Shown here in pieces: positions 1,505 to 60,174 of a stretch of DNA of 64,000 nucleotides. Position 1 is the first letter of the stretch. Every line of letters starts with the position of its first letter. The notes beneath the pieces were generated by a model. It saw nothing but the letters and a program-made list of their open reading frames with translations. It was not told the origin of the DNA and searched no databases. A program made the translations under genes and the position numbers. Source of the stretch: Ostrea edulis (taxonomy: Eukaryota); the NCBI RefSeq assembly GCF_947568905.1, contig NC_079165.1, positions 67,766,001 through 67,830,000 of the forward strand, written 5' to 3'.

Positions 1505-4500
1505 CTACTCATGGATAATTTCAAGATATGTGTCCATTTGACTGGTTAGCTCGCTTTGACAGATCGATGGACTTTCCACTTCAAAGGTCTGACACTCGGT
1601 CCGACTTCCGCTTTCTGACATCCCTTTTGGTGGCGAACCTATCACGTCTATATACGTGTTTAACATACCTACTGGTTTCAGGTAAGAATTATCCGGGGAT
1701 TCATTAAGATTGTTAGTCACAACATCCAGATAAACTGAACGTCTCTCTTCCAAACTCTCGTCTTCTTGTCTAACACTAAGTTCTTCTGATTTTGTACCAA
1801 TGACTTCATTTCTTAATTTTGGAAGCATTGGTTTTGTTTCATTACGGATTTCAATTTTCGAAACATCTCCGTTTGAGTTTTGTTGTTTTATTGACGTTTG
1901 CGACTCGATTTTGTCGTATCTTGAAATATTTTCCAGCATGCCAGACTCGTTTATTTCTACATAAAGCTCTTCCTCTGCTTCGTTCGTAGCCGATGGCTTG
2001 GACTTTTTGCTTGCAGAAATGTTTTTCCTACGCTTTTTCAGTTTTCCGTGAATCTGGTTAATTATTATTATGATCAGAAATAAAGATAATACAGATCCTG
2101 TGATTATGATGACCTGTAAGGTTTGTGAGTTACCTCCAGAAGCTGACGTAGGAGTCACAGAATTTGTTTCCTTGGATACCACTGCTAAGGAAGGAATGAT
2201 ATCCGTAGGAATAGGATATACTTCGTCTACTTTTGAACTGTAAGGATTTCTCGTTGATTTTGTTTCGACTTTTGGGGATTTTTCAATTGACTTCATGTCG
2301 TTTCCTGCTTCGGTACTTGTTGTAGAAGTGGACGCTATTAGAAAATTAGAAGTGTTAATGCATACATCTTTTATATGAATGTACCAATTTAAGAATTGTC
2401 CTCTTTATATAATCCATTAAATAATTCATTATACACACTAATTAGTTGATACTTATATGAAATCAACACTTACCCTGTGTACGTTTATAGTTGTTTTTGT
2501 ACTCCCTTTCTGTACTTACCAGTAATTAGTCTGCTACACCATTTGTACACCCCTGGTAGTTATTCTACTGATATATCTTTTCTATACACAAGCCGTAATT
2601 TATTCCAATACAGCCTTTGTAAAATTACTGATATTCATTTTGATAAACATTTATGCATACTTACCTGTAATTATTTTGATGTACCCCTCGTACATTTACT
2701 GGTAGTTATTCTAATATACTATTTGTACAGTTACCGGTAATTTTCTGATACATTCTTTGTACAGTTACCGGTAGTTATTTTGATACATTCTGTGTACAAT
2801 CACCGGTACTTATTCTGATGCATTGTTTGTACAGTTACCAGTAGTTATTCTGATGTATTCTTTGTATAGTTACCGGTACTTATTCTGATGCATTGTTTGT
2901 ACAGTTACCGGTAGTTATTTTGATGTATTCTTTGTACAGTTACCGGTTATTATTGTGATACATTGTTTGTACAATCACCGGTAGTTATTCTGATGCATTG
3001 TTTGTACAGTTACCGGTAGTTATTCTGATGCATTGTTTGTACAGTTGCCGGTAGTTATTCTGATGTATTCTTTGTATAGTTACCGGTACTTATTCTGATG
3101 CATTGTTTGTACAGTTACCGGTAGTTATTTTGATGTATTCTTTGTACAGTTACCGGTTGTTATTGTGATACATTGTTTGTACAATCACCGGTAGTTATTC
3201 TGATGCATTGTTTGTACAGTTACCGGTAGTTATTCTGATGAATTGTTTGTACAGTCACCGGTAGTTATTCTGATGTATTCTTTGTATAGTTACCGGTACT
3301 TATTCTGATGCATTGTTTGTACAGTTACCGGTAATTATTTTGATGTATTCTTTGTACAGTTACCGGTTATTATTGTGATACATTGTTTGTACAATCACCG
3401 GTAGTTATTCTGATGCATTGTTTGTACAGTTACCGGTAGTTATTCTGATGAATTGTTTGTACAGTCACCGGTAGTTATTCTGATGCATTGTTTGTACAGT
3501 TACCGGTAGTTATTCTGATACATTCTTTGTACATTGTCAGTTTTTCCTCCACACCCGTTGCACTCGTGGCGGTATCTTTTCCTTATACACTTGTATACAG
3601 TTATTCTGTTTCACCCTTTCTACTCCCACCGGTAAATGTTTTGCTAACAATTTGTATTCTTACCGGTACTTGTTTTGACACACCCTATATGGGGACTACA
3701 AACTTCATCCGCACTACATTTACACTGGAAACCACAGTTCTCCCCGTAAGACAGGTATGGACAAGTAGTGGAACAGTTATCTCCATAGGAACCCGTAGGG
3801 CAGGCTACAGAAAAAAATGAAAGTAAGATGATAAAACTCTTAATGTTGTTAGAGACAACGTGAATACGTAATAAGTTAAGATTTACAACGGTTTGTACTA
3901 GGAGAGAATAAAATGCAAGTCAGAACACAATTCAAAACTGTGGCGGGTCCAGAGAGTGGGGGGGGGGGGGGTTCTGGGGATTGGACCTCCCCACTTTCGT
4001 AAGAAAATTTTGCTAAAAAGGTAAAATTAACGCATTTTGAGGGTGGATAACCCCTTCAAAACCAAAATTATGGTAGAACCCCCTTTAAGAATTCCTGGAT
4101 CCGCCCCTGCAAAGTAAATAATTCATGTTTTGACTTCGTGTTTTAATTGTTACATCATATTGATGGAGAAATAGAGAGTGACTTACGAATGCATCCACCA
4201 TTGTGATGGTAAAAATTCGTGCAGCACTTGCCTCTGGAAAAAAGTTTTGTAATTAGATTTTATCTTCCAATAAATCTAACAAGAGAATCTATATAATGAT
4301 ATTTTGAATACATTTGTATGTTTACCAAGGATGATATTTTGGAATTAGCGGAAATTTGTAAATTCAATAGGCAACATATTAAGAAGAAAAAAATGAACCC
4401 ATCAATAAAATGTCATGTGTATTTACATAGCCCCATGGATCCACTAGTTTCATTTCACTCACAAGATACTATTCCAAGTGAAAAATGAAGATAACGGAAC

Positions 4501-7500: not shown

Positions 7501-10374
7501 TGAAACGAAACTTGATATGTCAACAAAACAATCGGAAAGCGGAAGTGAAAGCAGAATCAAAGAACTGTCCGAAATGTTGAAGAAACAATCGCGACAAATA
7601 GACAGTTTAACAAAAGCAGTTAATTCAACGCAAAGGTATGAACCTGACTGGTATTATGAACGACCACTGATATGTTTTGGATGCAAGAAGCAGGGCCACA
7701 AAATAGCTGACTGTCCATCAAAATCCGAGTCTACAAATGCAGATTCAAAACGTCAGTCTACAAAAGCTCCACCGGAAAACAACAGCCCTTCGTAATGCCG
7801 AGTCCAGTTATAGAAGGGAATCAAACGGACTCTTGGAGAATGAACACTCGATTAGTCGGTAAATGTCCTACTACATTTGTAAATATGAACGGTGTTAAAG
7901 TAAATTGTTTAGTAGATACTGGTTCATCAGTTTCAACAGTGACTGAATCTTTTTATCAAAAACATTTAAAAGCAGCAAGCAAACTGAATACTGACATTGT
8001 GTTTTCACTGAAAGCTACAAATGGATTTTCTATTCCATTCATTGGATACGTAGAGGTCAACATAGAGGTCATGGGTCAGCTATTAGAGCAAGTTGGAGTA
8101 TTAATAGTGAAGGACTCTGTTGACTATGAAACTCGACAACGCAAAGAGAAAATTCCGGCTATTTTAGGAATGAACACTATTTCACTTTGTAGAAAGCTAT
8201 TGGAAACACAACATGGCACTGATTACACAGAAAAAGTAGAAGAGATTTCAGTGAACAACAAGTTAAAGGAACAATTCAAAGCGTGTAACAGAAATGTAAA
8301 ACATGATGTCATAGGATATGTGAAAGTCTGTGCTAAATCTCCAGTTCGCATTCCTGGAAAATCAGTGACTGTTATCAATGGTACAGGACCAAAGCTACCA
8401 AGATTATATGAAGCAATGGTGGAACCTTTAGCATCTAATCAGCATTTGTCGTCAAATATTATTGTCGTTCGTACTTTAACCAAAGTGAACCGGGGATTTT
8501 TGAGTTTCCGCATAGCAAACGTTGGCAGTGACGAAGTGTGGCTAGCACCCAGAGCAAGAGTTGCAGTTCTTGTACATGGTGAGATAGTTGAAAATCATTC
8601 TAACATTGAATTTACCAGGCATGGAAACATTAAACCGCCGTGACGTTACCAAATCTGTTTCAAGATGACAATTCTATACATATTATGTCTGATATTATGA
8701 ACTTTTTTTGTTGCTTTGTGTTTTCATGTAAATATTATTAGTAGGAAGTATGTGGCTGTTTATATTTGATTAATGTTTTTCATTTATCGAGACGCTAAAT
8801 TTAAAGCTGGGGAGTATGTGGCAGGGTGATCTTTATATCTAATTGAATTTTCTACATTTTTCAATACTAAGCTCTGCTATATTAATTGAATGAAATCTAT
8901 TCACAACATTCTATTGACCAGGTTGTTTGTAGGAATTCACTCACTCTAGCTAAAACCAGTTTAATAACTTTTTCTTCTATAAATAAGTTTCGCGGGCTTT
9001 TTCATCAGTGCAGGAAATTTGTTTTCGAGGGAGTAGACCTATACATGTAGCTGCCCGTTGTGCCACACCTTAAGGTATATATTTGAAATGTTTATTATTA
9101 ACTGATTGATAATTATGTACGTTGAACTATTTTTTTATCAGTATATTTCTCTACTATGAAATGACCGTTTTTTGATCAAGGACTATAAATTTTGTTACTT
9201 TTTGAAGTAAAGTAATAAAGTCGATCATATACATTTCATTGGAATATTTTGACTTCTTTAAAGGGAAATACGAATATGAATTTATGTAATTGTATATTTT
9301 GTTGCATATGTAATGTGGTGTGTGATTTGTTAATTTCAGATCTGCCATTGCCTTTAGTTGTTAATAAATTTAATAAAACCTACGTCGCTTGGTTATAAAT
9401 AGATAAAACTTCGTCGATATATCTTAATGTCGAATTGAAGGCCACACCAAGAGGGTTTTTTTTTCTCACTTATAACTTTTTGAATAAATTTTGCTTCATA
9501 GGAATAAAAAAAAACTGGTCAGCTGACAAAGTAAGCACAATTCGTGCCCATGGGAATTCCAACAGATTCTTGGAAGACCTGATCACCAAAGACCACGAAG
9601 ATATTGTCAATGATGAACTCCAGCATATTATTTATTTTATCTTCAGAGACTTGTGCGTGCAATCAGAGTGGTGTTTAACAAAGTAATTTTTTGGATGAGT
9701 GATTTGTTGTCAAAAAATCTAGTATTTAATTCATCGTGAGGAATGGTTGTGCGAAGTGTTGAAAAGTCATAGGTTTTGATGTTGTTGATTTGAGAAAAGT
9801 TTTGTGATTTCAAATTCACTGAAAGTTGTTTAGAATGTTTTTAGTATCCACACTTGATGTACACCAATTCTGGCATATGTGGTCGCACAGTACGTTTGAA
9901 GTTTCTCATTCAAAGTTGTAAATATTTTCGTGAGGAGCAAATATAGGGGCTTTGTAGAACGCTTACTGGATCCAGCAATGTATCTTTTTGAGTGTTTTTA
10001 TGAAGTTTAGAAATCCAGTATAAGTACGGTAACTCATATTCATCCGACCCATTGACTGAAATATTAAATTCGTCTAAAACTGAAGCATGGTTTTGAAGAA
10101 TTTCATCTTTTGAAAGGGTAGTTAGATTATATGTAAGATTACCAAAAATGGAATTAATGCCAAGTTCGTTTAAAATACAATATGTAATAAGAGTACATAT
10201 AGAAATATTAATATTATGTCCATTTTAACAGTTTGATATTTATCTAGGTACATACCCTTGTTCTACGTACCCATCGTTAACACAGTTTCCTTTAGTTGCT
10301 GTTTCTGCATTGAGTGATAAAACCAATAAGGCCAATCCTATGTTTAGACCTCTCCATGAATTAAAAATGTTCAT
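1505..10374 (-). CDS. Gene A: small CED-1/MEGF10/Nimrod-like type-I membrane receptor, 373 aa; join(10271..10374,4187..4233,3664..3804,1505..2334)
   Basis: All GT-AG, phases 2/1/1 in frame. Exon 1 signal peptide MNIFNSWRGLNIGLALLVLSLNAE; exon 2 GKCCTNFYHHNGGCI (CCxGY-like); exon 3 CPTGSYGDNCSTTCPYLSYGENCGFQCKCSADEVCSPHIGCV (EGF-like); exon 4 Ser/Thr stalk, TM VIIITGSVLSLFLIIIII, and tail with YVEI, YDKI, YLDV, YLKP, YIDV, YLEI. Family assignment comes from the Cys pattern. Confidence 0.85.
2690..3535. repeat. 35-bp tandem array in intron 3 of gene A
   Basis: Unit tgtacagttaccggtagttattctgatgcattgtt; period checked (cattg at 2961 and 2996); roughly 24 units. Confidence 0.95.
3938..4109. mobile_element. 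MITE with C(A/T)GTGGCGG(A/G)TCCAG-type TIRs
   Basis: Begins ctgtggcgggtccag, ends ctggatccgcccctg; poly-G subterminal tract. Confidence 0.75.
4480..4732 (-). mobile_element. Penelope-like element (PLE) 3' fragment
   Basis: Shares the ~250-bp tail (…ttgatcactgttcgttatcttcacctttca) found downstream of the PLE RT C-terminus elsewhere in the window. Confidence 0.8.
4981..5495 (-). mobile_element. PLE 3' fragment including RT C-terminal remnant
   Basis: Same tail plus degenerate 'TQLYVKRDDFSLYIVNFPYLCCNIP..SAYGVYIAQL' on the minus strand. Confidence 0.8.
5496..5850 (-). mobile_element. tRNA-derived SINE
   Basis: Minus-strand head with A-box TGGCCTAGAG (~5831-5841) and B-box GGTTCGAATCC (5788-5798); tail GACGTTAAACAAGATACAATCAATCAA; flanked by tatcgaaat direct repeats. 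Confidence 0.8.
5862..6058 (-). mobile_element. SINE-like family 2 (head CCCGTGGGGATCCGGGTTAGAATAGG)
   Basis: Same family at 30195, 30869 and 54475; 3' half homologous to the tRNA-SINE; flanked by tatcgaaat repeats. Confidence 0.75.
6102..6682 (+). repeat. 5' LTR
   Basis: TGTGG...GTTATA; matches 8817-9397 at offset 2715. Confidence 0.95.
6263..6294 (+). promoter_or_regulatory. LTR core promoter (TATA plus initiator-like)
   Basis: TATAAATA at 6263-6270 and TCAGT at 6290-6294 (29-nt spacing); AATAAA signals near 6648-6662. Confidence 0.5.
6836..7795 (+). CDS. gag: Gag polyprotein (capsid plus CCHC zinc knuckle), 319 aa
   Basis: Intact ORF downstream of the PBS; LPKFNG..IEDWIEDV..LSGNARDEI capsid-like segment; CFGCKKQGHKIADC knuckle. 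Confidence 0.9.
   Translation: MAAHPTVKSLQKEVTALQNKISEMGWENTEAKTVYVQRDRTLPKFNGYNMDIEDWIEDVHYAARGTTTEEGADLIYQHLSGNARDEIKFLDGNVRKNPLQMINVLREAFGDKENAMKLQKKFLDRKQSESETLRQYSYALMDIMKKLLRKDSSVFRNEDKAMRDQFSGNVRDTFLRKHLKRILRTQPDITFIELREEATLWAEEDENTDVKDSSEKQIEKSNETKLDMSTKQSESGSESRIKELSEMLKKQSRQIDSLTKAVNSTQRYEPDWYYERPLICFGCKKQGHKIADCPSKSESTNADSKRQSTKAPPENNSPS
7795..8643 (+). CDS. pro: Retroviral-type aspartic protease (truncated Pol), 282 aa
   Basis: LVDTGS active-site motif and ILGMN flap-like motif; -1 frame relative to gag; ends before any RT. Confidence 0.88.
   Translation: MPSPVIEGNQTDSWRMNTRLVGKCPTTFVNMNGVKVNCLVDTGSSVSTVTESFYQKHLKAASKLNTDIVFSLKATNGFSIPFIGYVEVNIEVMGQLLEQVGVLIVKDSVDYETRQRKEKIPAILGMNTISLCRKLLETQHGTDYTEKVEEISVNNKLKEQFKACNRNVKHDVIGYVKVCAKSPVRIPGKSVTVINGTGPKLPRLYEAMVEPLASNQHLSSNIIVVRTLTKVNRGFLSFRIANVGSDEVWLAPRARVAVLVHGEIVENHSNIEFTRHGNIKPP
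8817..9397 (+). repeat. 3' LTR
   Basis: Copy of 6102-6682, followed by TSD aata. Confidence 0.95.
9520..10150 (-). mobile_element. PLE (Naiad/Chlamys-type) reverse-transcriptase fragment, degenerate
   Basis: Minus-strand translation with frameshifts: ELPYLYWISKLHKN ... NMLEFIIDNIFVVFGDQVFQESVGIPMGTNCA. Confidence 0.85.
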
Positions 10375-13300
10375 ATGAAATATTAAATCCATTCCGTCTA
10401 TGCTTTCTAAACTTACATTGAAAACTCTTTGACCCATTTCCCTTCAAACATTTATTGTTCAATAATAGTCAAGTGTGCTATATCCTGATGGAATATTAGA
10501 GAACACGGAAGATTCATTAATTGTATGCACGTTTTCACACACTAGAAACAAATTATGCAATTGAACCAGTAAAACATTATGCATATATTCGACATTCCAA
10601 ATGTTGTAATACTTGATCTTGTATAATATTGTATTTGTCTTCTTTAGTTTTCTTTCCATTTTCCATTTGTATTGTATATTTTTCATTAGTATTGTATTCG
10701 AGGAATTGTTTATTTTGATTAGTTATGAAGAATTTTATTGGTCAAGTTTTAGTCTGTATCGTATTGAAAACTAGCGAAATGTTCTGAATGCTCAACCACA
10801 ACATAAACTGACCCTCTTTTTTCTGCATGTAAAACTTATACGGTACCAATTTTGATGCATGAATAGTTTAAACACGAGGTTGATGAGTGACAGAGTTAGA
10901 ATCTACATGTAAGTAAACAGTAGTCATCAAAAATATATTGCCTATGGTTTGATAATTGAACCATAGTTTACACCAATGAGATTGATTGTAACAAGCCAAA
11001 ATAAACAATCCCTCAGATACAATATACGCAAATGAAAAATAATATACAATTCAAATAAACAATTATACAGTACAAATGAAAATCCATTAATGCAAAAGAA
11101 AATTATAAAACCAAAAGGAAAATATAAAATACAAATGGGAAAAATACAATAAAACGAAAAAAAATATATAATTCAAATAAAAAATATGCAATACAGAATG
11201 TATATTTTTACAATACAAATGAAAAATCATGCAATACAAATGGAAAATATAAAAAAAAAAACAATTCAACATTTGACATGCCATAATACGAATTGACAAT
11301 TAGCCGAGTCGATATTTATATCTGACCCTGAATATTTTTCTTCTTTTTTTTCTTCTATGAAATAAAGTTATTTTCGTGTTGCCATACCTTGAAAGAAAAC
11401 CGAAAATCTACTTTTATCTAAATCGATTCCAATTTTTTAAACTTTAACGTCACACATTTGGTAAATAACAAAAGTAGAAGCATTTTTAAGTTGTGTATTA
11501 TTATTATATGAGGTAGAATCAATCACATGTACATGTACGATGGATTTGATCTCAGTCGCCGCTCTCCGAATGCCTACTGCTTATGATGATTGTTGGACAT
11601 TTAATAGTAAAGGACAAGAAGTACTCCAAATTACCCCTTTCCCCTTAACGTACAGTATGGTATGGAGGAGAAAGATGAGCAGAAACACAGACATTATGAA
11701 CTGCACTTTATGCCTTGAAGAAAAAAAATAGAGAAAAAATTCAGCATCGATGTGACCAATGACATTGATCTATGATACAAAAATAATGATTGTTATGCAG
11801 AAGTACAAGTAGAAAAGTGAACATTCCCTAGTACACGAAGAAGAAAAAACTAGAAAACATTTCTCTTTCATCCACTGTAAATTGTAGGAAAATATTAGAT
11901 CCATGGGTCAGAACGTGAACAACATTAACTGATAATGAAGTATTCTCCATCATTTCCTGGCTGTTCGATTTATGGAGACTTATTGTTTTTGCTGGTTCTT
12001 ATTATTCCCCCGCTTCTTGTTCATCTGCTTCTTTCTCGCACCCACAGGGTTTTGACACAATCTGAGCAAACTTGTGTTATTTAGTATAATAGGAGGAAAG
12101 GGAACTAACAAACTGCCGTTAACTTCTCGGGTGCTCGCTTCAAACTCTTACAACTTCGGTATTAATTATGATGATAATGTATGAAGTTTTCCCAGTCGAA
12201 ATCCAGAACTTTGTTCTGTTTTGTAATACACAAATCGTTCACCTGATTTCACAGAAACTTTGAAAAAATAAGTCCAACTTCCGAGAATTAGCCTTGCACC
12301 ATTTTCTCCACGCAATTTCCTTCATTACGTTGGATTTTACGCATCCTTCATCCTTTGCAGTCCATGTTAGGGTTACCTTTAAAATATAGCTACTTGTGGT
12401 CACCCTCACAATATTTAAATGAATGTTGATCGTCCGTTTTCACCACCTATTAACCTCCGAGTTCAAACGGGTCAACCATATTTAAACTTCATTATAGGTG
12501 TTCAGCACTGAATGACTCAAATTTAAAAGGTGCAAGGCAATTGGAAAATACTACTACCTTTGTTGCGGAACTTCGCCGGAAATTTATGGTTTGGGGTGGT
12601 TTTATATTGAATAATGAAGTATGACCCTATTATTATGTATTTCTTATTTACAGATTCAGTTCTGGGACATACAGTTCATATAGTTTATGCACTAAGCTCT
12701 GTCCCAGGAAGAACTACTAGGATATATCTCGCCTGTTAACATAACGAAGTTGCATGCTGACATAGATGAATTGTATTTCGACATAAATATGTTGCATGTC
12801 TGTATTATTATCTCGCATGTCAACATAATTAAGATGCATCTCAACATAAATAAGTTGCAGAGAGCATATTGGAAGTCCCACGTGGGCAATATTTGAGACT
12901 TTTGGAATATTTTACAAATTCTTATCTGATTACATTTTTCTTATCCGAATCGACAAATTCATCAAATTGAATGTGTGAGGTGTCCACAACCTACCGCTGT
13001 CAGAACATTTTTAAAAATTCGTTATATCTCAAATAGTTTTCTTTTTAAAGTAAGTTAAACATAGCATTGTTTCTTGCAAAAATATCGACGTTTATTGACA
13101 ACGTCTTGGAAAGGTGACAAGCAAGATTACGTGAAAATGTTTCTTTGGTGCAAGGATTTAATGGTTTACATAAATATATCTACCTTTTCAATTAAATGGG
13201 TTAGAGTATTTCCATTTCTAATTGGAATTGAAAGAAATCTATGAAATAAAGGAAAATTTTATCAGATTTTAAATAAGTGTGACATTAAAAGCGAAAATAC

Positions 13301-14425
13301 TATTTTGTCAAACAGCGAAAATGATTTAACTGTCCATACATTTTTTCTAGCTGAGACTATGATACCCTTCCTCAAAAATATATTAAGATGAAGTTTAGAA
13401 AGAACAACTATGATTTTGGGCCAGGTATTTTATACACACAGCAATATATTACTTCTGTAGTTGTTGGTATATCTAGTTTGTTTTGTTGGAGGCTCTTAGT
13501 TTTCGTTAGTATACGCCACGGTTGCCGATCTTAAAGGAGATTTCGTTTTGTTTTCTATGTAAACATATCTTCTTCCCCGTATTCCCAAAATGTCCACATG
13601 TTGTACTTTAATACAATGCAGATAGGTTTGTCAAGTTTACAAGGAAAACACTTTGGACCATTTTAAAGTATTTTCTAAAGCTATATTCAACTCAATCTAA
13701 TAAAGATAATTTTTTGTACAATGTATAAGTATATGTGTGTGGAATCATGGGAAGGGTTTGAATTCACTAAATATAACTCTTTTAGCTGATGCCTAAAATC
13801 AGGATTATTGAAATGTGGGCAATAATGTTAGAAATATTCTATTGTTTTTAGGACTTAACTATACATATACGACGGTCGTAACAGTGGAGTATTTTGAAAG
13901 GGAGGGGTGCACCATCTAAAATGGCTGATTTATGATTATTGTTATTATTTGCTAAAAAGAGTCTAGGTTTGATATGTATGTACATGTTATAACTCTGAAT
14001 TTTGAACTCTTTGTCATTTGTCAGAAGCATATAAGATCTTACAAATGATCTACAAATTAGATATATGAATTGTGATCGGGAAAAAATTTGTGCGGAGAAC
14101 GACCGTCGTGGGTAAAAAAAAAGTGTTTAAATACTTTATAACGTCATTTGTTTACGTACGTTACATCAACATTCATTACATCGTGACTGATAAATAAGTA
14201 CAGCAAAAGCAAATATGTCTATTGAATGTTATCAAAATGGCTACCGTGATTTTTATAAGCATATTATTTGTCATGAAACATTTCCTCCTTGCATCATTCA
14301 TACAGTCATAAAATAAGGAATTACATCATTAATTACAAATGACCTATTATCATTTACGTCTACTTAGCGTTACTGTTTCACATGACTGTGCTATTTTACC
14401 TCATATGACAGTACTAATTCTCCTT

Positions 14426-14430
<5 letters not shown>

Positions 14431-14476
<46 letters not shown>
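14431..14476. repeat. (TA)n microsatellite
   Basis: Direct observation. Confidence 0.95.
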
Positions 14477-14477
<1 letters not shown>

Positions 14478-14592
14478 TTGACTTTTCATATTAAAAAAAA
14501 TAATTTGAAATGAACTTGGCCACATATTTCACATCTTTGTATAGATTTTTTTTGTGTTTTATTTCAAATTCATGTTAAGAAATAATGCATTC

Positions 14593-14780
14593 AACTCCGT
14601 TTACCTGATCAGGATCTACGGCTCACGGCGGATGTGACAGGTCGACAGGGGATGCTTACTCCTCCTAAGCACCTGAACCCAACCCTGCTGTGTCCAGGGG
14701 TCCGTGTTTGCCCAATTATCTATTTTGTATTGCTTATAGGAGTTTTGAGATTGATCACTGTTCGTTATCTTCGCCTTTCA
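14593..14780 (+). mobile_element. PLE 3' tail fragment
   Basis: aactccgtttacctgatcagg...gttatcttcgcctttca. Confidence 0.8.
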
Positions 14781-16214
14781 TTGAACAAAATTTTGCATGT
14801 ATACATTTATGTAGCCTTATAGAAAAACATAAATTCTTTGAAAATCCGGAGAATCACTCCAGTTTTGGATTCTATAGATTTATGAGACGCACGTGTATTT
14901 TCAAAAACAAAATCAGTTTCATACACACTTGGTCTTGAACAAATTATTTGGACATTTAAGATATAAGATAACATAATTTTTCATTTTACGTGCGGATAAG
15001 GCCGATGTCCTCTGCTTACCTTACCGAGTTCTTTCTGTTTGCTTTCATCTTTAAAAAGCATGACCATGCGACAATATAAATTAGAAAATTTGAACAGCAG
15101 AGGTAATTTCAACTACAAAAAATAAGATTTCTTCGCTTTGATAAATTAATTTTCTTATACTTTATACATTTTACTATCAGTTTTAAAAAGTTTTTAACAT
15201 AATGAAATACCAAATGGTTTTGATTTGATGATTTTGTCAAAGTGAAGAGTTATGGCGGTAGGTGGTTTTGATGTAGGCCTATAAAATTCGATTTATTCTC
15301 CCCAGGTTATTTCTAAAATTTACAATGCATCAAGACTTTTGCTTACTAAATCTCAAATATTGTGAAGTGCAGGCTTTTATGCTTACCGTTTTCCGTGCTT
15401 CACACACCCACACCCACTGATGATATTTACATGCAGACTTGTGATGATAGCAAACAAAACAATGTGTTGGGCGTATTTAAACAATGGTGTATTGAATAAA
15501 GGCAAAATATTCCTCATCATTTTATGCTCTCTCCCTGGACTGCTCGGATAATGACTCCAAACTCTACTTCATCCAAATTGACACACATTTCACGATTTTG
15601 TAGATTGGCGTATTCACACACTTTCTTGATTTCTTTGTGTTCCTCTAAATTACTTCAGAGTCTCTCATCTGTTTGACGGAAGTCACCTCTGTTTCATCGA
15701 CCGCATCAGATAATTAATTTACAGCTTTTCTATTGTTCAAACAAGTCCTTTTTCGCAGCCTCATCAATTTTACTTTCGAAGAATGAACAAGTTTTTCCCC
15801 TTCAAAGTATGAACAAATCTATTTGGAGCTGACGGATTTCACTGGCATGTTATTGTTACAGAGATCTCTCATATTTCTCAGATGTTTGTAAGTAAAACTT
15901 ATCACTCCAGATACCTAATAGCTGCATATTAGTATGACTATCATAGTCGTTATTGTATGAAATATGACAGTATCAAAATCTATAAATAGATGTAAATCAG
16001 CTCTATAAACTGCAGGTTTTCTTCCTCAAATGAGATAAGGGTAAATTATTTTTTTTGATCACATGATTTGCGAAAATATAATGTATTTTTCTTGATTTAA
16101 CGATCTTCATGTTTTACTTCACTATCAATTTCAATTCTAGAACTAAATGAGGAATAGGTAATTATTCCAGGCAGCTCTTTCGATATTTCATTATGTGTTG
16201 TAGGGGGTCAGATT

Positions 16215-16515: not shown

Positions 16516-16526
16516 ATTATAATATG

Positions 16527-20119: not shown

Positions 20120-23100
20120 TATATCCAGGTTCCGCCTCGAAGCTTTAGTCAAGTTTTAGACAGGAATCTTATTCTAGCCGACAAAGGTTTTACTATTCAT
20201 GATCAGTTGCCATAAGATGTTTGTTTGAACATTAGCTGGGTTTTTTTATCAACATGTGATTACTTATTTACGCCCGAAGAAGCAGCACTATGTAACAAGA
20301 TAACTAGAGTCCGCACTCATGTTGAGAAAGCAAATGAGGGTATCACGAACCATAAAATTCTCCGTCACATTCCAGAAATATACACACCTATATCAACAAA
20401 TATTTTCCAACTTTGTAGCTCTCTTGTAAAATTGCAAGCACCCCTTTGAAAGAAACAACTTGATTAAATTGTTATTTCATCATCTCAGATGATAAAATAT
20501 TTTATCTCGTGTCTCATTTTCAACTAGGAAAATGTTTTGCTTATTAGTTTTATCACATGTTCACGTATAAATGATACAGTATGCAGTGCTGAAAAACCTC
20601 CGGTCAGTAGCTAAACTCTGTGATATCATTTGTATCCTTGGGTAGGTTACTTTACTCTATCGGTACACCCTCTTCACTTAGGGGTTAAAATGGCTACTTG
20701 GAATGTTAGACAAGCTGGTTATTTGGATGTAAAATCATTTACACCGTATACGGCAGCTCTGCTTGTATGTTCCCTTGAATTATTTCAGGAATGAAAGTGT
20801 TGAAAAAATCATATCGGCTGTGTAATGTGCTTTTTTTTGTCAACTCGGAGTCCTTTATGATCCCGACAATTTGACAGCCTACTCTAGTCGAAATAATCAA
20901 ATCACAACCGTTATTGTTGTATAAATGGAGATAGCCTTGTGCATAGTGATACCAGGGATGGGTTGACTCAAGGCTCTGCACTATAAAAGCAACAAGAAAT
21001 TTCTAGATCTACATATTGAATAACATAATAAACTGGACAAAAAGTAAACCAACAAGCACATAGATTACAAAATATTAAACCATTAATATTTTATCGATAC
21101 AATGTACATATATATCCAGTATACAAAGTATTATATACGTGTATTTACCAAGATAAAATACCTTTAGACTGCATTGCATCATCTATTGTTAAATATGCTG
21201 CAGGTGATTGAGAGGACACTTCACTACTACGCGAGGCACAGCAAAATATAGAGCTTCTGGATTATGGGAACTCGCATCACATGTTGGTGGTTGTAGGGCT
21301 AGATCATCTGGAGATGTACTTAAAGCTCCCGTTAGTGAAGCCAAATCCCTCTTTAAATTTCTATCTTTTTACTGATATGAAAAGACAAGGTGAACTCTAG
21401 ACACCAATAATTCGAATTTTACACAATGAATTGTTGAATATCTATAAAAATATCATGAAATTCTTGATATATCGGTAACTCAAATAGCAAAGAATCTGAG
21501 GGAAATATTACAATATTTAATACCAAAAATAAGAAATCTCAATTTCAAAAATACTACTTATGATTCCTTGCACCAAATATAATCTATTTAGCATAAAGAA
21601 GTAATAAACAGTGAATGGCACACCACAGCAAATAAAAGAAATATGTTTGTTCGATATATAAAGACAGCTAACTTACCATTCATTCCATTTCAACTTCAGA
21701 CATGTCACTTTGGGGTTTGCTGTAAGAGTTGTGATACACCTGTTTGTTTGCGTTTTTGTCGATTTCAACCCATGCGTGAATTCCAGATTGACCGTCAGAT
21801 TTAAAAGTGGTAAGAAAATGGTGGTGAACAATGTCTTGGGCATTGAAATTCGGATAACATGTACGCTATTTAATCTTGGAACATCAATATTACGATAAAA
21901 AGAGATTTATCCGAAACTACACGAAGTTTTAGTCATGGATGCTTTGTGAGGATAATCAGAATAAATAAATGGAAAGCCCTATCATTCAATTCTAATATCT
22001 ACCGAGACATCGTAAAATAGACACAATATAATATGAAAAGACAGAAATGGATCTTAAATGAATAGTAATTTATCCGTATAATGTCCAGCGAAGCCATTTG
22101 TTAATTTCAAGCACTAATTCAACTCTAGTGTAATTATTACCCAGGATTTCATATCATAATATTTAATGTTGACATCTTTTTTTATTTCTAGGGAATAGGA
22201 TTTATCAGCTACAAATACTAAGTGAAACGGGTTTATAAACGGAAATATTATAAATACTTGTTTGATTTACTTACCTTCTCCCGTGTACATGTACTTTATT
22301 TGATGGATTTATAGAATTCAAAAGCTGCCATTTAATAACTTGACATGTTCATGTGATATTTTTCTCCGATGAAAATAGGTTTCTAAATTTAATTTGAGGA
22401 TTGCTACGTATATCATTTCTACATATGCAAACTTTCAAGAACCTGCCTATATTGTCAGGTTTATACATTCTCAACTTTAAAACGACGTTTCTGTACATTA
22501 AAACTATTTCATCATATCGAAAGGTGTTGAAATGACAGAAGAGAAGTAAAGGGAAATAGAAGTGGATGATTTGTTAGTCAATGCAAAAGATGCTATTTTG
22601 AAAAAAGGAAGAAAATCACTAGTAAAATACAATATTAAGTTCACATTTTGTTACTATGAAACATTATGGGAAGACAACATTGAAAACAAAAGATATCCAA
22701 GAATGAACCTTTTGTATGCATTTAAACTTTTGTACCTTTCACTGAAATATGAAAGCGTAATACATGAAGGAAGTTGAATAAAATTTGGGCTTTTCATAAT
22801 CAATTGGACATACAAGAGGTGTTATTTATTGCAGCATCAATTTCCGGTTTTATGGAGTTTTGAGTGGACGTCATGTAGTTTCCGGCTTTGGTTTTTGTAG
22901 AAAAAGTGGATGCTGTAATAGAAAATAGATATACATTTTTATTATCAATGGGAACGTACCAGTATCTCTAATAGTTAAAGAGATAATTTTGATCAAATAA
23001 GATATATCATGTAAAAATATACCCCGGGAAGAGGAAGAAACTATCTTTACAATAATGAATGCATGTTTAGAAGTTTTTAATCATTAGAGAAATATCCCTA

Positions 23101-23165: not shown

Positions 23166-24757
23166 TGGTAGTTATGCTAATACAGTTACCAGATGTTATT
23201 CTTTATTCATTCCTTTTACAATTCAATGTAGTTATTCTCATTTCCCCATTCTACTCTTACCGGTAAATGTTTTGCTAACCATTTGTATGCTTACCAGTAC
23301 TTGTTTTGACACACCCTATATGGGGACTACACACTTCATCCACACTACATTTACACCAGAAACCACAGTTCTCCCCCCACGACGGGTATGGACAAGTAGT
23401 GGAACAGTTATCTCCATAGGAACCTGTAGGGCAGGCTACAGGGGAAAAAATGAAAGTAAGATGATAAAACTTTTAATGTTGTTATAGAAGTAACCTGAAT
23501 AATATGATACGATATACAAGGGCTTGTACTATGAGAAAAAATACAAGCTAGAACATAATCAATCGAAATCAATCATTTTTGTTTTGATTTCGTTTTTCAA
23601 CTTTTAAATATGGATTTCGATCAGATTGAAGGAGAATTAGAGAGTAACTTATGAAGGTAACCACCATTGTTATGGTAAAAATTCGTGCAGCACTCGCCTC
23701 TGGGAAAAAAATTGTATTTAGATTCTATCTTCCAATAAATCTAACAGGAATATCTATATTATGATATTTTGAATACATTTGTACTTTTACAAAGGATTAA
23801 ATTGTGTACTGTTGTAAATTCAGTAAATATTGAGAAAAAATTAACCTATGATTAAAATTCCAAATGTATTGATATACAAGTAGATCTACCTTTTCACTAG
23901 ATTGATTTCACTCACAAGATACCATTCCAAGTCATATCATTATTTATAGGTTATTGACTGAATATTGGGAAATATATCTGCAAAAGGTTCTTGCGCCGAA
24001 AAGCTAACTGATTTTGTGAGGTGTTTTGTTGTTCATTCTGCAAAACTGTAAAAGGCGGGTATATTTCCAGATATTCAGTAAATATCCTTTTTATAATTTT
24101 TTATTAGTTCTGTGTACTTCTAATTCTATAAATGCTCAATTTTTTAAGAAACGACTTTTATTAGCAGAGGAACTTTTTACGTCCATTAATAGTTGTTAAC
24201 ATATGAGGTCTCAAGACCATAAACTGAGAATAGGCTTTAGTCAAAATGTTGCTTACTTATAATTTAAGATTTCATTACCACAGATTTAAAAAAAAAATGC
24301 TGGTTTATATATACAAATCAAATACAAACATATTTTGAAAATGTTATTTGCTTATGAAAATTATTTCAAAAATTAATTGGAATCGAAATATAGACTATTC
24401 TCAATATAGGGTCTTGAAATCTGATATCACAATAATCGTGTTATGTAGGCAAATGTCACATTTAAGTTAAATAATCCCTGAGCGTCCGCATTACCGACAA
24501 TCATAGCTCAATAAAAGCTCAGGCACTCTAAATAGAATCTATAAGAAAAAATATCAAAATATGTAATAAAGAGTACATATAGAAATAATAATATCGTGTC
24601 CATTTTAACAGTTGGCTATTTGTCTACGTACATACCATTGTTTTACCTACCGATCGTTCATACAGTTGCCTTTATTTGTTGTTTCCGCATTGAGTGTTAA
24701 AGCCAATAAGGCTAATCTTATGATATCTCGACATCCTTGTGAATTAAAAATTATCAT
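22800..24757 (-). pseudogene. Gene B: TM-less (secreted-type) paralogue; join(24651..24757,23653..23699,23295..23435,22800..22912); exon-2 donor mutated
   Basis: Exons 1, 3 and 4 open with canonical sites. Exon 2 ends ...TACCTTC|ATAAGT (GT->AT) and has Cys->Tyr. Terminal exon ASTFSTKTKAGNYMTSTQNSIKPEIDAAINNTSCMSN* has no hydrophobic helix. Would be 135 aa. Confidence 0.75.
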
Positions 24758-24961
24758 TTGAAATATCAAATCCATTCGATCTACGCTTTGGAAACATAGA
24801 ATGGAAACCCTATGATTCATTTCCCTTCCAACATTTATTTTTCAATAATAGTTAAGTGTGTTATATCCTGATGGAACGTTAGTGAATGCGGAAGATTCAC
24901 GTTTTTAATAAACAGGAAACAAATTATACAATAGATTCAGTCAACCATTTTACGTATTGAT

Positions 24962-27052: not shown

Positions 27053-29735
27053 CTATTGATGGACAACTTCAAGATATGTGTCCCTTTGGCCGGTTAGCTC
27101 GCTTTGACAGATCGATGGACTTTCCATATCAAAGGTCTGACACTCGGTTCGACTTTCGCTTTCTGACATCCCTTTTGGTGGCGAACCTATCACGTCTATA
27201 TATGTGTTTAGCATACATACTGGTTTCAGGTAAGAACTATCCGGGGATTCATTAAGTTTATCGGTCACAACATCCAGATAATCTGAACGTCTATCTTCCG
27301 AACTCTCATCTTCTTGTCTAACACTAGATTCTTCTGATTTTGTTCCAATGACTCGATTCCTTAATTTTGGAAGCATTGGTTTTGTGACATCACATATTTC
27401 AATTTTCGAATCATCTTCGTTTGTTTTTTGTTGTTTTATTGAAGGTTGTGACTCAAATTTCTCGTATCTTGAACTATTTCCCAGCATGCCAGACTCGTTG
27501 ATTTCTACATATGCCTCTTCCTCTGCTTCATTTGTAGCCACGGGGTCAGATATTTGTCTTGTAGAAATGATGTTCATGTGCTTTTTCAGTTTTCCGTGAA
27601 TCTGGTTAATTATTATTATGATCAAAAATAAAGATAAAACAGATCCTGTGATTATGATGACCTGCAAAGTTTGTGAGTTACCTCCAGAAGCTGACGTAGG
27701 AGTCACAGAATATGTTTCCTTGGATACCACTGCTAAGGTAGGAATGATATCCATAGAAACAGGATATGCTTTGTCTACTTTTGAATTGTTACGATTTCTC
27801 GTTGATTTTCTTTCCACTTTCATTGAATTTTGAATTGACTTCATGCCGTTTCCTGCTTTGATACTTGTAGAAGGAGTGGACACTGTTATGAATTTAGAAT
27901 TGTTATCATTTTTACATGCTTTATATAAATGTATGAAATTAGAATTGTTCTCCTTGTATAATCCATTCAATCATTCATCATATACACCGATTCGTTGATA
28001 CTTAGATGAAATCAACATTTAGTAAATGCATTTAAAATTTATATATGCTACATACACCTTTCTGTACACTTAACGGTATTCATTCTGATTCATCCTGAGA
28101 TTGATCACGGTTCGTTATCTTCGCCTTTTTTCTAACTTACAGTTATTCTTATACCCACTTTCCATACTTACTGGTAGTTCGTTCAGCACACCCTTGGAAC
28201 ACTTACCGGTAGTTAATCGGATATACCTTTTATACACCTACCGACAATTCTTCTGATACACAGTTTGTACGCTTTGTGGTAGTTATCATGACACATCATT
28301 AGAACACATACCCTTACGTATTCATTCTCATAAACTCTTACCTGTAGTTGTATCGATAGTCTTTTTATCGTTTACCTTTCGTTAACATGATACTCTCCCT
28401 TTGTATGCTTACCTGTATCAGTTGTTATTCTAATATATATTTAGCATACCTACCATTGTTATGCTGTTATGTTTACACGCTTACTAGCAATTTTTTTAAT
28501 ATCTAAACTTTGTACACTTACCGGTAGATATCCTAACACATCCTTTGTACACTTACCGATAGATATCATAACATAACCTTTGTACACTTACCGGTAGATA
28601 TCCTAACACAACCTTTGTACATTTACCGGTAGATATCCTAACACAAACTTTGTACATTTACCGGTAGATATCCTAACACATCCTTTGTACACTTACCGGT
28701 AGATATCCTAACATATCCTTTGTACACTCACAGGCATTCTTCTGTTTCCTTCTTTGTAACTTTCCAGTGGTTAGTCTGTTTCACCCTTTGTACCTTCACC
28801 TGAAGTGTTTTCCTAAACCTTCGTATTCTTACCGGTATCGATTCTGACACATCCTTTATAGGGATTGCACTCCTCATCCGGACTACATGTACACCGGTGC
28901 CCACAGTCCTTCCCGTAGAACGGAGGTGAACAGGTTATGGAACAGTTATCTCCATATGAACCCGCAGGACAGGCTAAATACAAACAATAATAAATATAAC
29001 ACTCTCAGTGTTGTTCTTAATGTTGTCTTAGGTACAATGTACGTAACGCATTATTATATGCAACGGTTTGTTTCATGTGGAAAAAAAATCCAAGCTAGAG
29101 CAAACTCCTGAATCAATTAATTATATGCGTTTGTACGTATATAATACTCTTTCGATCAGGCTATTGGTAAATTATAGAATGACTTACGAATGCATTTCCC
29201 ATTGTCATGGTAAAAATTCGTACAGCACTCGCCTCTGGAAAAATATTTTATAATGAAATTTTATCTTGCAATAAATCTATCACGAACAACTAGACAATGG
29301 CATTTTGAATACGTTTCCCAAGAGCGAAATTTAGACATGCTATCGTAATGGTATAAATTCATTACATATCCAGAAAAAATATTACACTTGTAAATACATA
29401 CATATAGAAATAGCTCCATGCTATAAATTCATGTCATTCACAAAATATCATTTAATGTCCCATCCAATATAACATAAATCATTTGCTTTTCCGTTACGTT
29501 GATACATTTGCCGCCTTTGCCTCTACTATAAAAACACCCTAATAGCAGGTCTCCACCTCTGCCGTAATTTGAAATATTAATATTCTATATATCCCTTAAG
29601 TTCGATATTTATCTGGGTATACACTTGTTCTACGTACCTATCGTTAACACAGCCTTTAGTTGTTTCTGCATTGAGTGATAAAACCAATAAGGCTAATCCT
29701 ATGTTTTGCCCTCTCCATGAATTAAAAATCCTCAT
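27053..29735 (-). CDS. Gene C: small CED-1/MEGF10/Nimrod-like type-I membrane receptor, 371 aa; join(29638..29735,29188..29234,28833..28973,27053..27882)
   Basis: All GT-AG and in frame. MRIFNSWRGQNIGLALLVLSLNAE; GECCTNFYHDNGKCI; CPAGSYGDNCSITCSPPFYGKDCGHRCTCSPDEECNPYKGCV; TM identical to gene A; six Tyr conserved. Confidence 0.88.
28505..28730. repeat. 35-bp tandem array in intron 3 of gene C
   Basis: Unit ttgtacacttaccggtagatatcctaacacatcct; period checked (28511 to 28546); about 6 units plus degenerate copies to the left. Confidence 0.92.
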
Positions 29736-30194
29736 TTGAAATATTGAGTCCATTCCATCTATGTTTTCTAAGTTTTAACTGGAAGCATTTTGATCAAATT
29801 CCCTTACAACATCTATTTTTATTTATGATAATCAAGTGTGTTATAAATGTATCCTGATAGAATGTTAGAAAACGCGGAAACTCCATTGGCTGTGACGCAG
29901 TTTTCAAACACAGGAAACAATTTGTACATTGGAACCGGTCAGACTCTTTACATAATGATCATTTATAAACGAGCAAATGTGACAACATGCATATCTGAAA
30001 ACAAATTGAATTTTCTTCCAAACTGATACCAGTCTATTCGTAGTCACTGGTGTCTGAATACATATGGTTGAGAATAATCACTAGTTTTGGCCATCATAAA
30101 AAATGATAAGAATGTCCTTATTTATGACTTTGTTCACAGTATATTTATGTTCCATTAACCATAATTTGTTTTGCTTATCCAACCTAATTACTGT

Positions 30195-42480: not shown

Positions 42481-42517
42481 ACTAACGGTATTATTCAGAA
42501 CAATTATTATTACATTG

Positions 42518-44374: not shown

Positions 44375-44720
44375 GCAAAACATTGACCAACAGGTTGATA
44401 ACCTTCTGTATAAACCAACAATTCTAAGTAGACGGTTATTAAATAAGTCCTTAATAGATATCAATCAATTCCGGAGAAGGTGTTGACTATTCTATGGAGA
44501 AGGTGTAGTAAATAAGGGGATGGTGATGATGATGCTGATGCAGAAGGGTGATGCTAATTGAGATGTTTCATGAATGAAACATAATAACAAATATTTCCAA
44601 CTAAACAATAAGATGTTAAATATGCACCTTCTGACTGGGGATGTCGGGCTGAAACAGTTGTTGTTGACTCATCTCTGGGGATGCGGTGACCGAAGTGCTG
44701 AAATCCAGTCGGGTTCGGCA

Positions 44721-47594: not shown

Positions 47595-47638
<44 letters not shown>

Positions 47639-59003: not shown

Positions 59004-60174
59004 CACATTTGCTCTACATCTATGTACTTCTAACTCTATGAATGCTCAATTTTAAAAGAAAATATTATAATTAGCAAACGATGTTCTTTACGTCCATGAA
59101 TATTTGTGAACATATCAGGCCTCAAATCCATACACTGAAAATAGACTTTTAAAAATCAAAACACTAGAAATGTTATGTTCTTATGAAAAATATTTGAAAA
59201 GTTAATTGGATTTGAAATTTAGACTTAAGTCTATTCCCAGGTTATGGTTTTGAAAACTGATATCACAATAATCGTGTTAAGTAGGCAGATGCGATGTCAC
59301 AATTAAGTTAAGTGGTCTCCGAGCGTCTGCATTACCGACAATTATAGCTCAATAAATGCCCAGGTACTCTAAATAAAATATACAGCAAAAAGTATCAAAA
59401 TATGTAATAAGAGTGGCTATAGAAATATTAATATCTTGTCAATCTTAACAGTTTGATATTTGTTTAAACATGCATTTCCTTGTTCTACGTACCGATCGTT
59501 AACACAGCTGCCTTTAGTTGTTGTTTCTGCATTGAGTGATGAAACCAAATAGGCTAATAATCCTATGTTTCGACCTCTCCGCGAATTAAAAATTATCATT
59601 TGAAATATTGAATCCATTCCATCTATACTTTTTAAAGATACTATGGAAACTCTATGGCTAATTTCCCTTCAAACATTTATTTTTCAATCATAGTAAAGTG
59701 TGTTATACCCCGGAAGATTCATTGATTGGGAAACACGTTTACCAATATAGTTTAGAATTACAGTCAGAATCAACACCAAATCATATTTCTAAGAGACATA
59801 GTTCTTGGCAGCCTTCAATCATAAACGAAAATTATTCGACCATCATTACTAACACCAGCACTAGATTTTACAGACTCTGAGAATGTAACAAGAGTGGTAG
59901 ACAACGCACTAACATGACATGGGCAGGGCATCAGAAGAGGTAGCAGGTGTGTGAGATACAAAGGTGTCAGTTGGAATTGACGAAACGTAAGCAGAATTAG
60001 AAATACATATGATTTCTTTATTCAAAAGTTAGTTATTGATAGCTAGTCCCTAAAAACCATTCGATTTCCTCAATTCTATTTATTATAAGATTTGAACGTT
60101 ATCCTAAAACATATCAAAAAGGAATAAGTAAATCAGTAATAAGTAATCCAGTTAATTTAGGAGGATATTGAGAT

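What the first reader, a model, noticed from the sequence alone, without database searches (positions are those of the whole stretch)
1505..59599. Alternating membrane / TM-less cluster of miniature CED-1/Nimrod-like receptors with Tyr-motif tails
Seen in sequence: four same-strand paralogues share exon sizes (exon 2 = 47 bp, exon 3 = 141 bp) and phases, ordered TM (A), TM-less (B), TM (C), TM-less (D). The next TM-type flank starts at 62912. The ectodomain is only ~65 aa with 12 Cys. The 184-aa tail keeps six Tyr, including SxYxxV (A: SVYLDV; C: SDYLDV) and SxYxxI in A, and has no NPxY. Established: CED-1/Draper/MEGF10 are phagocytic receptors with many EGF repeats and NPxY/YxxL motifs, and ITIM consensus is S/I/V/LxYxxI/V/L. 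Inference: a lineage-expanded paired-receptor/decoy-like innate immune family (signalling receptor plus soluble binder), not a true MEGF10 orthologue.
Basis: partly seen in the sequence, partly recalled or inferred. Interest (0 to 1): 0.75.

Follow-up and report, generated by a model that had tools for sequence, protein, structure and literature searches.

The report
Oyster mini SCARF/MEGF-type receptor gene array
This stretch of the flat oyster genome holds a row of small genes for one-module scavenger/engulfment-type receptors with a Draper-like tyrosine signalling tail. The two "membrane-less" copies here are broken genes whose surviving end exons may instead give the upstream receptor gene secreted forms.

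Summary
The window is Ostrea edulis OX387705.1:67766001-67830000.

- **Intact genes.** Copies A and C are NCBI genes LOC130046406 and LOC130052358.
- **Alternation.** The membrane / membrane-less order is real and continues on both sides of the window.
- **Broken copies.** B has lost the exon-2 donor (GT to AT) and one Cys. D has lost the exon-2 acceptor (AG to AC) and has an in-frame TGA. Neither lies in any called protein-coding gene.
- **Soluble forms.** In a 99.3% identical copy 161 kb away, NCBI models join C-type exons to B's exon 3 and short last exon. This gives secreted isoforms of 205 and 185 aa. I obtained no spliced-read evidence.
- **Ectodomain.** It is one 12-Cys module related to SCARF1 and Tie2 EGF repeats (profile E about 4e-10), followed by a 77-aa Ser/Thr-rich stalk.
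- **Tail.** It keeps six Tyr across oyster genera.

The family is oyster-wide and uncharacterised. The scan found a similar mini-receptor array elsewhere in this genome (s1-311809). An immune role is inferred only.

The parts
1505..2334 (-). Gene A (LOC130046406), exon 4: Ser/Thr stalk, TM segment (about 2051-2113) and 181-aa tail with stop. An internal GAG|GTAACT donor follows 2134, just before the TM. The ITAM-type motif YVEI-x11-YDKI is at 1907-1963.
   Evidence: Translation is an exact substring of P0020, P0021 and P0001. Hydropathy peak 2.76 at residues 178-196. Motif.
3664..3804 (-). Gene A exon 3 (141 bp, phase 1-1): 8-Cys SCARF/MEGF-type EGF-like unit.
   Evidence: AG/GT splice sites; translation exact in P0020.
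4187..4233 (-). Gene A exon 2 (47 bp): GKCCTNFYHHNGGCI.
   Evidence: AG/GT splice sites; translation exact in P0020.
10271..10392 (-). Gene A first exon 1a (signal peptide, isoform X3). Isoform X1 starts at 10437 and uses a donor 15 nt further on (10256).
15386..15520 (-). Gene A alternative first exon 1b (MMRNILPLFNT..., isoform X2).
   Evidence: P0021 residues 1-45 map here at 100%. The NCBI gene range is 1505-15520.
22800..22912 (-). B-type short terminal exon (ASTFSTKTKAGNYMTSTQNSIKPEIDAAINNTSCMSN, then stop). It is a diverged copy of the 5' end of exon 4.
   Evidence: Acceptor AG. The peptide is exact in P0025 and P0036, the isoforms of the 99.3% duplicate gene.
23295..23435 (-). B exon 3: intact, 8 Cys, AG/GT splice sites.
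   Evidence: The peptide is exact in P0036, where it forms the second EGF module.
23653..23699 (-). B exon 2, disabled: the donor is AT (23651-23652) instead of GT, and the fourth Cys codon TGC has become TAC.
   Evidence: The L003 copy has the same lesions.
24651..24775 (-). B exon 1: open signal-peptide exon with donor GT.
27053..27882 (-). Gene C (LOC130052358), exon 4: stalk, TM and tail. An internal donor GAG|GTAACT follows 27682. The ITAM-type motif is degenerate here (YVEI-x11-YEKF).
   Evidence: Translation exact in P0023. The 27682-27882 piece is also exact in P0025.
28833..28973 (-). Gene C exon 3.
   Evidence: Translation exact in P0023.
29188..29234 (-). Gene C exon 2.
   Evidence: Translation exact in P0023.
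29638..29753 (-). Gene C exon 1 (signal peptide).
   Evidence: Translation exact in P0023.
52062..52174 (-). D-type short terminal exon (...KPETDAATNNISCMSN, then stop).
   Evidence: It matches no database protein exactly.
56379..56557 (-). Decayed remnant of the stalk part of a TM-type exon 4, inside D.
   Evidence: tblastn of C's exon 4, E 5e-6; alignment.
57938..58078 (-). D exon 3: intact, AG/GT splice sites.
58297..58343 (-). D exon 2, disabled: the acceptor is AC (58344-58345) instead of AG, and there is an in-frame TGA at 58331-58333.
   Evidence: Both D-type copies outside the window have AG and TGC here.
59493..59617 (-). D exon 1: open signal-peptide exon.
62912..64000 (-). 3' flank of the next TM-type gene, E (LOC130052360, coding sequence ends at window 64398).
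   Evidence: 90.6% identical to window 1-1141; locus L008.

Best explanation
This is part of an array of at least 380 kb in Ostrea edulis that encodes small type I membrane receptors.

Each intact gene (A and C here) has four coding exons. They give a signal peptide, one 12-Cys module of the SCARF1/MEGF10/Tie2 EGF type, a Ser/Thr-rich stalk and a strongly conserved TM helix with a GxxxS motif. The tail is disordered, about 181 aa long, and carries six conserved Tyr. The membrane-proximal pair, EEExYVEI-x11-YDKI, fits the ITAM pattern with the same Tyr-Tyr spacing as Draper.

TM genes alternate with TM-less units, which arose by duplication and loss of the TM part of exon 4. Within this window both TM-less units (B and D) are dead as stand-alone genes because exon 2 is disabled. 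Their exon 3 and short terminal exon keep open frames and splice sites of matching phase.

Inferred from NCBI models at a 99.3% identical duplicate: transcription of C can run on into B. Splicing then goes either from a conserved donor just before the TM-coding segment, or from exon 3, into B's exon 3 and short exon. This would yield secreted one- or two-module isoforms.

Inferred from motifs only: ligand-driven clustering leads to Src-family phosphorylation of the ITAM-type motif and docking of a Syk/Shark-type kinase, as for Draper. Secreted isoforms would compete for ligand.
For: - **Gene models.** Every exon of A and C translates to an exact substring of NCBI proteins P0020, P0021, P0001 and P0023. 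The window is identical to OX387705.1.
- **Lesions.** Of 12 exon-2 copies in the fetched loci, only D and the two B copies are damaged.
- **Annotation.** No protein-coding gene is called over B or D.
- **Read-through isoforms.** P0025 is C exons 1-3, the stalk and B's short exon. P0036 is C exons 1-3, B's exon 3 and B's short exon. LOC130046608 likewise spans a TM unit and a TM-less unit, with isoform P0015.
- **Internal donor.** GAG|GTAACT is identical in A, C and L003.
- **Module.** A profile of 105 relatives hits SCARF1 (E 3.4e-10) and Tie2 (E 3.9e-10). The AF2 model of the module has pLDDT 86.6, and its best structural matches are Tie2 (Z 5.1) and SCARF1.
- **Tail and TM.** They are conserved across Ostrea, Saccostrea and Crassostrea. 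The ITAM pattern is present in 25 of 30 tail-bearing relatives. Draper's ITAM definition and its Tyr positions Y934/Y949 are taken from PMC6219719.
- **Transcripts in relatives.** Intron-less Logan contigs encode full-length TM forms.
Against: - No RNA run was on record for this stretch, and no spliced junction was observed.
- The read-through isoforms are NCBI predictions for the duplicate locus, not for this copy. LOC130052358 has only the TM product.
- The one run guessed to be RNA (X1) covers the short exon only with D'/LOC130046608-type variants, not B's or D's own sequence.
- The 27-kb duplicate may be an uncollapsed haplotype.
- Gene C's second ITAM half is YEKF, which is not canonical.
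- All the Tyr motifs also fit the YxxPhi endocytic signal.
- Ligand, tissue and function are unknown.
Confidence: 0.6

Rival explanations
1. B and D are working stand-alone genes for secreted decoy proteins, paired with the TM receptors A and C.
For: - Exon 1, exon 3 and the short exon are open with good splice sites in both copies.
- An intact D-type gene, D' (P0037, 156 aa), is annotated just outside the window.
- A 113-aa TM-less protein is annotated in Saccostrea (P0038).
Against: - B's exon-2 donor is AT, and a structural Cys is lost.
- D's exon-2 acceptor is AC, and the exon holds an in-frame TGA.
- Skipping exon 2 shifts the frame, because exon 1 ends in phase 2 and exon 3 starts in phase 1.
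- Neither copy lies in a called protein-coding gene.
- B's lesions are shared by the duplicate copy.
Confidence: 0.1
2. B and D are plain decaying pseudogenes. The read-through isoforms are transcriptional noise or prediction artefacts with no function, and only the TM receptors matter.
For: - I obtained no junction reads.
- The isoforms are annotated only at the duplicate locus.
- Exon and flank divergence between B and D is similar (82-89%), so I see no clear sign of selection on the surviving exons.
Against: - Read-through or pre-TM splicing is modelled independently for four genes: LOC130046498, LOC130046608, LOC125682185 and LOC130052351.
- The pre-TM donor is conserved between A and C, whose exon 4 is only 77-79% identical.
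- Exon 3 and the short exon of both B and D stay open with intact sites, while exon 2 is hit in both.
Confidence: 0.25
3. The family is not immune-related. It could serve cell adhesion, development or shell and mantle biology, with the Tyr motifs acting mainly as YxxPhi endocytic sorting signals.
For: - There are no expression or ligand data.
- Five of the six Tyr motifs fit YxxPhi; NSYLKP does not.
- Tie2-type EGF repeats are not immune modules.
Against: - The fixed 11-residue spacing and the acidic EEE lead-in of the Tyr pair are conserved across genera. That fits tandem-SH2 docking better than sorting alone.
- The nearest relatives by profile include the scavenger receptor SCARF1.
Confidence: 0.25

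Closest known systems
SCARF1 / SREC-I (scavenger receptor class F; PDB 8hna, 8hn0; PMC11563577)
   Same: It is a type I membrane protein. Its N-terminal Cys-rich EGF-like units are of the same subtype: the family profile matches SCARF1 residues 42-99 (E 3.4e-10), and SCARF1 is among the top fold matches. It also has a long cytoplasmic tail.
   Different: SCARF1 has a row of EGF-like repeats; profile pieces continue to about residue 200 in 8hna. The oyster proteins have one 12-Cys module on a Ser/Thr stalk. Their tail, with an ITAM-type motif and five further Tyr motifs, found no relatives outside oysters among the hits whose source I checked.
Draper / CED-1 / MEGF10 engulfment receptors
   Same: The EGF subtype is the same. 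The tail signals through Tyr motifs, and YxxI-x11-YxxI fits Draper's ITAM definition YxxI/L-x6-12-YxxI/L with the same 15-residue Tyr-Tyr distance as Y934/Y949 (PMC6219719). Non-ITAM Tyr are also present, as in Draper.
   Different: There is no EMI domain, no multi-EGF array and no NPxY. The protein is 379 aa, against roughly 1000 aa or more for these receptors (from general knowledge). It is not an orthologue.
Tie2 EGF-like repeats (PDB 2gy5)
   Same: This is the best structural and profile match to the 8-Cys unit (Z 5.1; E 3.9e-10).
   Different: Tie2 is a receptor tyrosine kinase with Ig and FN3 domains. Only the EGF unit is shared.
Soluble receptor isoforms made by alternative splicing, and conjoined or read-through transcripts of tandem genes (general knowledge, e.g. 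sFlt-1, esRAGE)
   Same: A donor used just before the TM-coding segment, joined to a downstream terminal exon, would give a secreted ectodomain.
   Different: Here the downstream exons belong to a disabled tandem paralogue. One modelled isoform (P0036) gains a second EGF module from it.
Mini scavenger-receptor gene array elsewhere on this O. edulis chromosome (scan note s1-311809)
   Same: It is an array of cut-down SCARF/MEGF10/Draper-type receptor genes in the same genome. That note reports alternative tails.
   Different: It is a different locus, 34.7 Mb away. I did not compare the sequences.

Membership tests
MEGF10 / Draper / CED-1 engulfment receptors | EGF-like repeats of the 8-Cys MEGF/SCARF/Tie subtype | tested here: met
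   The family profile hits SCARF1 and Tie2 EGF repeats at E about 4e-10. Fold matches are Tie2 (Z 5.1) and SCARF1 (Z 3.5).
MEGF10 / Draper / CED-1 engulfment receptors | Long tandem array of EGF repeats | tested here: not met
   There is one 12-Cys module per protein. 96 of 131 relatives have exactly 12 Cys in the module.
MEGF10 / Draper / CED-1 engulfment receptors | N-terminal EMI domain | tested here: not met
   Pfam finds no EMI or any other significant domain, even at E up to 10.
MEGF10 / Draper / CED-1 engulfment receptors | NPxY motif for CED-6/GULP | tested here: not met
   A regex search finds none in P0020.
MEGF10 / Draper / CED-1 engulfment receptors | ITAM (YxxI/L-x6-12-YxxI/L) that recruits a Syk-type kinase | tested here: inconclusive
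   The sequence pattern is met in A and in 25 of 30 relatives. C has YEKF. Kinase binding cannot be tested with these tools.
SCARF (class F scavenger receptors) | Type I TM protein with N-terminal EGF-like units homologous to SCARF1 | tested here: met
   (E 3.4e-10, profile positions 11-67 against SCARF1 residues 42-99). TM segment from hydropathy.
SCARF (class F scavenger receptors) | Several EGF-like repeats and binding of modified LDL or polyanionic ligands | tested here: not met
   There is a single module only. Ligand binding cannot be tested here.
Paired activating/inhibitory immune receptors | Near-identical ectodomains linked to opposing signalling tails (an ITIM tail against a charged-TM or ITAM-adaptor form) | tested here: not met
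   The partners differ by having or lacking the TM and tail, not by opposing tails. The TM-less partners in this window are disabled.
Nimrod (NIM-repeat) receptors | NIM repeats (the consensus is recalled from memory) | not tested
   No NIM-specific model was run. The Pfam scan gave no significant EGF or NIM hit.

The most novel reading that the evidence does not exclude
A decaying tandem paralogue has been taken over as the 3' module of its upstream neighbour. One promoter then yields either an ITAM-bearing membrane receptor or secreted one- or two-module binders. The whole alternating array would work as a receptor/decoy system tuning haemocyte engulfment or recognition in oysters.
Probability: 0.25. 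Interest if true: 0.6.

Novelty: new variant of a known kind. Interest (0 to 1): 0.42.

Why it matters
Bivalves rely on innate immunity and have large, poorly understood expansions of MEGF/SCARF-like genes. This family reduces such a receptor to one ligand-binding module plus a Draper-like ITAM tail, so it is a compact system for testing how engulfment-type receptors signal in molluscs.

The locus also offers a concrete, testable case of soluble isoforms created by splicing into the remains of a neighbouring duplicate. Ostrea edulis is a restoration and aquaculture species limited by disease. The proteins are already in databases as uncharacterised predictions. What is added here is interpretation, not a new kind of molecule.

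Tried and rejected
- **Pfam.** Scans of the exons and of the whole proteins gave nothing significant.
- **Single-sequence PDB search.** It gave only weak Tie2 hits (E 0.13). The family profile was needed.
- **Full-length AF2 model.** It was poor (pLDDT 41) and was not used for fold search. Only the module model was used.
- **RNA evidence.** No run on record as RNA holds the stretch. The single read-laying run gave contigs only, with no splice joints; the joints listed lie in a repeat at 24990-25140.
- **P0039.** This 149-aa protein looked like a soluble isoform in another oyster. It is a full-length transcript with a 1-nt frameshift in an A-run.
- **Literature.** Searches by locus names found nothing. 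General MEGF10/oyster searches gave only expression lists.
- **Rescue of B.** I considered a U12-type or cryptic donor for B's exon 2. The AT...AG intron ends and the out-of-phase GT sites argue against it.
- **Candidates for E.** LOC130052351 and LOC130046608 map elsewhere, so neither is gene E.
Full report
**Where the window lies.** The last exon of copy A finds Ostrea edulis proteins at 100% identity. Their gene sits on OX387705.1 of assembly GCA_947568905.1. Locus L001 is 100% identical to window 1-25520. The window is therefore OX387705.1:67766001-67830000, and all the genes discussed are on the minus strand.

**The observation.** Self-comparison and alignments show four homologous units. 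Exon 2 is 47 bp and exon 3 is 141 bp in each, with the same phases.

- Every exon of A translates to an exact substring of LOC130046406 isoforms X1, X2 and X3 (P0001, P0021, P0020).
- Every exon of C is exact in LOC130052358 (P0023).
- A also has an alternative first exon at 15386-15520.
- 62912-64000 is the 3' flank of the next TM gene, LOC130052360, whose coding sequence ends at window 64398.
- Mapping exon types over eight fetched loci shows that TM and TM-less units alternate beyond the window on both sides, over at least five pairs. The family spans at least 67.45-67.85 Mb.

- B's exon 2 ends ...CTTC|ATAAGT, so the donor is AT rather than GT. The fourth Cys codon has become TAC.
- D's exon 2 is preceded by AC rather than AG and contains TGC TGA in frame.
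- Of 12 exon-2 copies in the fetched loci, only D and the two B copies are damaged. The two D-type copies outside the window are intact.
- Skipping exon 2 would shift the frame.
- No protein-coding gene is called over B or D in the NCBI annotation as indexed.
- D also holds a decayed remnant of a TM-type exon 4 at 56379-56557. The short terminal exon of B and D is itself a diverged copy of the start of exon 4.

**Where soluble forms come from.**

- A stretch of at least 27 kb, 161 kb away, is 99.3% identical to window 12760-39750 (L003). It carries the same B lesions.
- Its C-type gene, LOC130046498, has three kinds of NCBI product.
  - X1 (P0024, 377 aa) is the TM form.
  - X2 (P0025, 205 aa) is exons 1-3, then the stalk up to an internal donor GAG|GTAACT just before the TM, then B's short exon.
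  - X3 (P0036, 185 aa) is exons 1-3, then B's exon 3, then B's short exon.
- The window encodes all of these pieces exactly, apart from one G/R difference in C's exon 3, and with the same splice sites.
- The internal donor has the same phase as the exon-3 donor and is identical in A and C.
- LOC130046608 likewise spans a TM unit plus a TM-less unit and has such an isoform (P0015).
- LOC125682185 and LOC130052351 have pre-TM truncated isoforms.
- An intact stand-alone TM-less gene, D' (P0037, 156 aa, named 'cell death abnormality protein 1-like'), lies just left of the window.

**RNA evidence.**

- No run on record as RNA held the stretch.
- Laying four runs on 22790-28789 gave contigs only and no splice joints.
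- Run X1, guessed to be RNA, covers exon-sized patches and leaves the introns at zero. One contig stops at 22913, one base past the start of the short exon.
- Its letters are of the D'/LOC130046608 type, not B's or D's own.
- The read-through isoforms therefore rest on NCBI models. From general knowledge, alternative Gnomon isoforms normally need transcript support, but I could not see that support here.
- Intron-less Logan contigs from other oysters encode full-length TM forms.

**The protein.**

- P0020 has a signal peptide and then a 12-Cys module.
- A 77-aa stalk follows (44% Ser/Thr/Pro).
- One TM segment, VIIITGSVLSLFLIIIIINQI, contains GxxxS.
- The tail is 181 aa with six Tyr and no NPxY.
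- Pfam sees nothing significant.
- A library-wide search found 389 representatives at E up to 0.001, mostly 100-400 aa. The ten I looked up are all from oysters: Ostrea, Saccostrea and Crassostrea/Magallana. Their automatic names include PEAR1, MEGF10 and delta-like.
- The module keeps 12 Cys in 96 of 131 relatives.
- A profile of 105 modules hits SCARF1 (E 3.4e-10) and Tie2 EGF repeats (E 3.9e-10).
- The AF2 model of the module has pLDDT 86.6. Its best matches are Tie2 (Z 5.1) and SCARF1 (Z 3.5), which is weak but consistent.
- The stalk and tail are predicted to be disordered.

**The tail.**

- Across 13 proteins from several oyster genera the TM segment is almost invariant.
- All six Tyr sit in conserved motifs: EEExYVEINES, SRYDKI, DYLDVV, PDNSYLxPV, NxYxxV..PP and YLEVVH.
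- The first two together read YxxI-x11-Yxx[IL]. That fits the ITAM definition given for Draper (YxxI/L-x6-12-YxxI/L), with the same 15-residue distance as Draper Y934/Y949 (PMC6219719).
- 25 of 30 tail-bearing relatives keep it. C-type copies have YEKF, and one Saccostrea protein has YDKM.
- SxYLDV fits an ITIM, and in other species an ITSM.
- ITIM signalling has been reported in oysters (PMC11841013, abstract only).
- All of this is motif-level inference.

**Verdict.**

- The sequence features are real, and the gene models for A and C are right.
- The family is a cut-down, oyster-wide relative of SCARF/MEGF10/Draper receptors, not an orthologue.
- The TM / TM-less alternation is real, but B and D are broken as genes.
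- The best current reading is that their surviving exons serve as alternative 3' exons of the upstream receptor gene.
- The proteins are already in databases as uncharacterised predictions.
- The scan noted a similar array elsewhere on this chromosome (s1-311809).

**Rule followed for spliced models.** I sent no self-joined spliced model to any search or folding tool; database proteins identical to the models were used instead. One local script joined C's exons only to compare them with database proteins.

Noticed in passing
window 6100-9397 (+), inside intron 1 of gene A: An LTR element with two 583-bp LTRs that are 100% identical (6100-6682 and 8815-9397). Between them are only a gag-like ORF with a CCHC knuckle (6836-7795) and a protease-like ORF (7795-8643). 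This looks like a very recent insertion of a short, probably non-autonomous element, antisense to the gene.
   Followed up: no
window 12760-39750 and L003 (OX387705.1:67604816-67631768): A 27-kb block 161 kb away is 99.3% identical, and the copy of gene A (LOC130052351) follows it. It is either a very recent segmental duplication or an uncollapsed haplotype in the assembly. NCBI annotates the soluble isoforms only at that copy.
   Followed up: partly
window 2471-3533, 28421-28860 and 56807-57956: A tandem repeat with a period of about 70 bp lies in intron 3 of A, C and D, and is absent from B. The scan's note s1-287607 reads it as an amplified copy of the exon 3 / intron 3 junction.
   Followed up: no
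window 43795-44427: A tandem repeat with a period of about 39 bp stays open in three reading frames (for example SVPSNRSQHLHTL repeated).
   Followed up: no
window 4479-4732 and at least 12 other places (e.g. 14593-14781, 24966-25141, 31655-31906, 34335-34588): A dispersed repeat of about 250 bp occurs in both orientations, with copies 80-92% identical. DNA runs show extreme depth at 24990-25190.
   Followed up: no
window 36703-38685 (-): An unrelated gene with a 196-aa product is called between C and D. The scan's note s1-287608 reads it as GH36/raffinose-synthase-like.
   Followed up: no
L009 (Logan SRR21047153 contig, 1178 nt): A transcript of a related oyster receptor carries a 1-nt frameshift in an A-run. 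This splits it into 149-aa and 189-aa ORFs, so the database protein P0039 is not a true soluble isoform.
   Followed up: yes
TM segment, window about 2051-2113 (A) and the equivalent in C: The TM helix VIIITGSVLSLFLIIIIINQIH is more conserved across oyster genera than the ectodomain. It holds GxxxS and polar N/Q, which hints at a partner or dimer contact within the membrane.
   Followed up: partly
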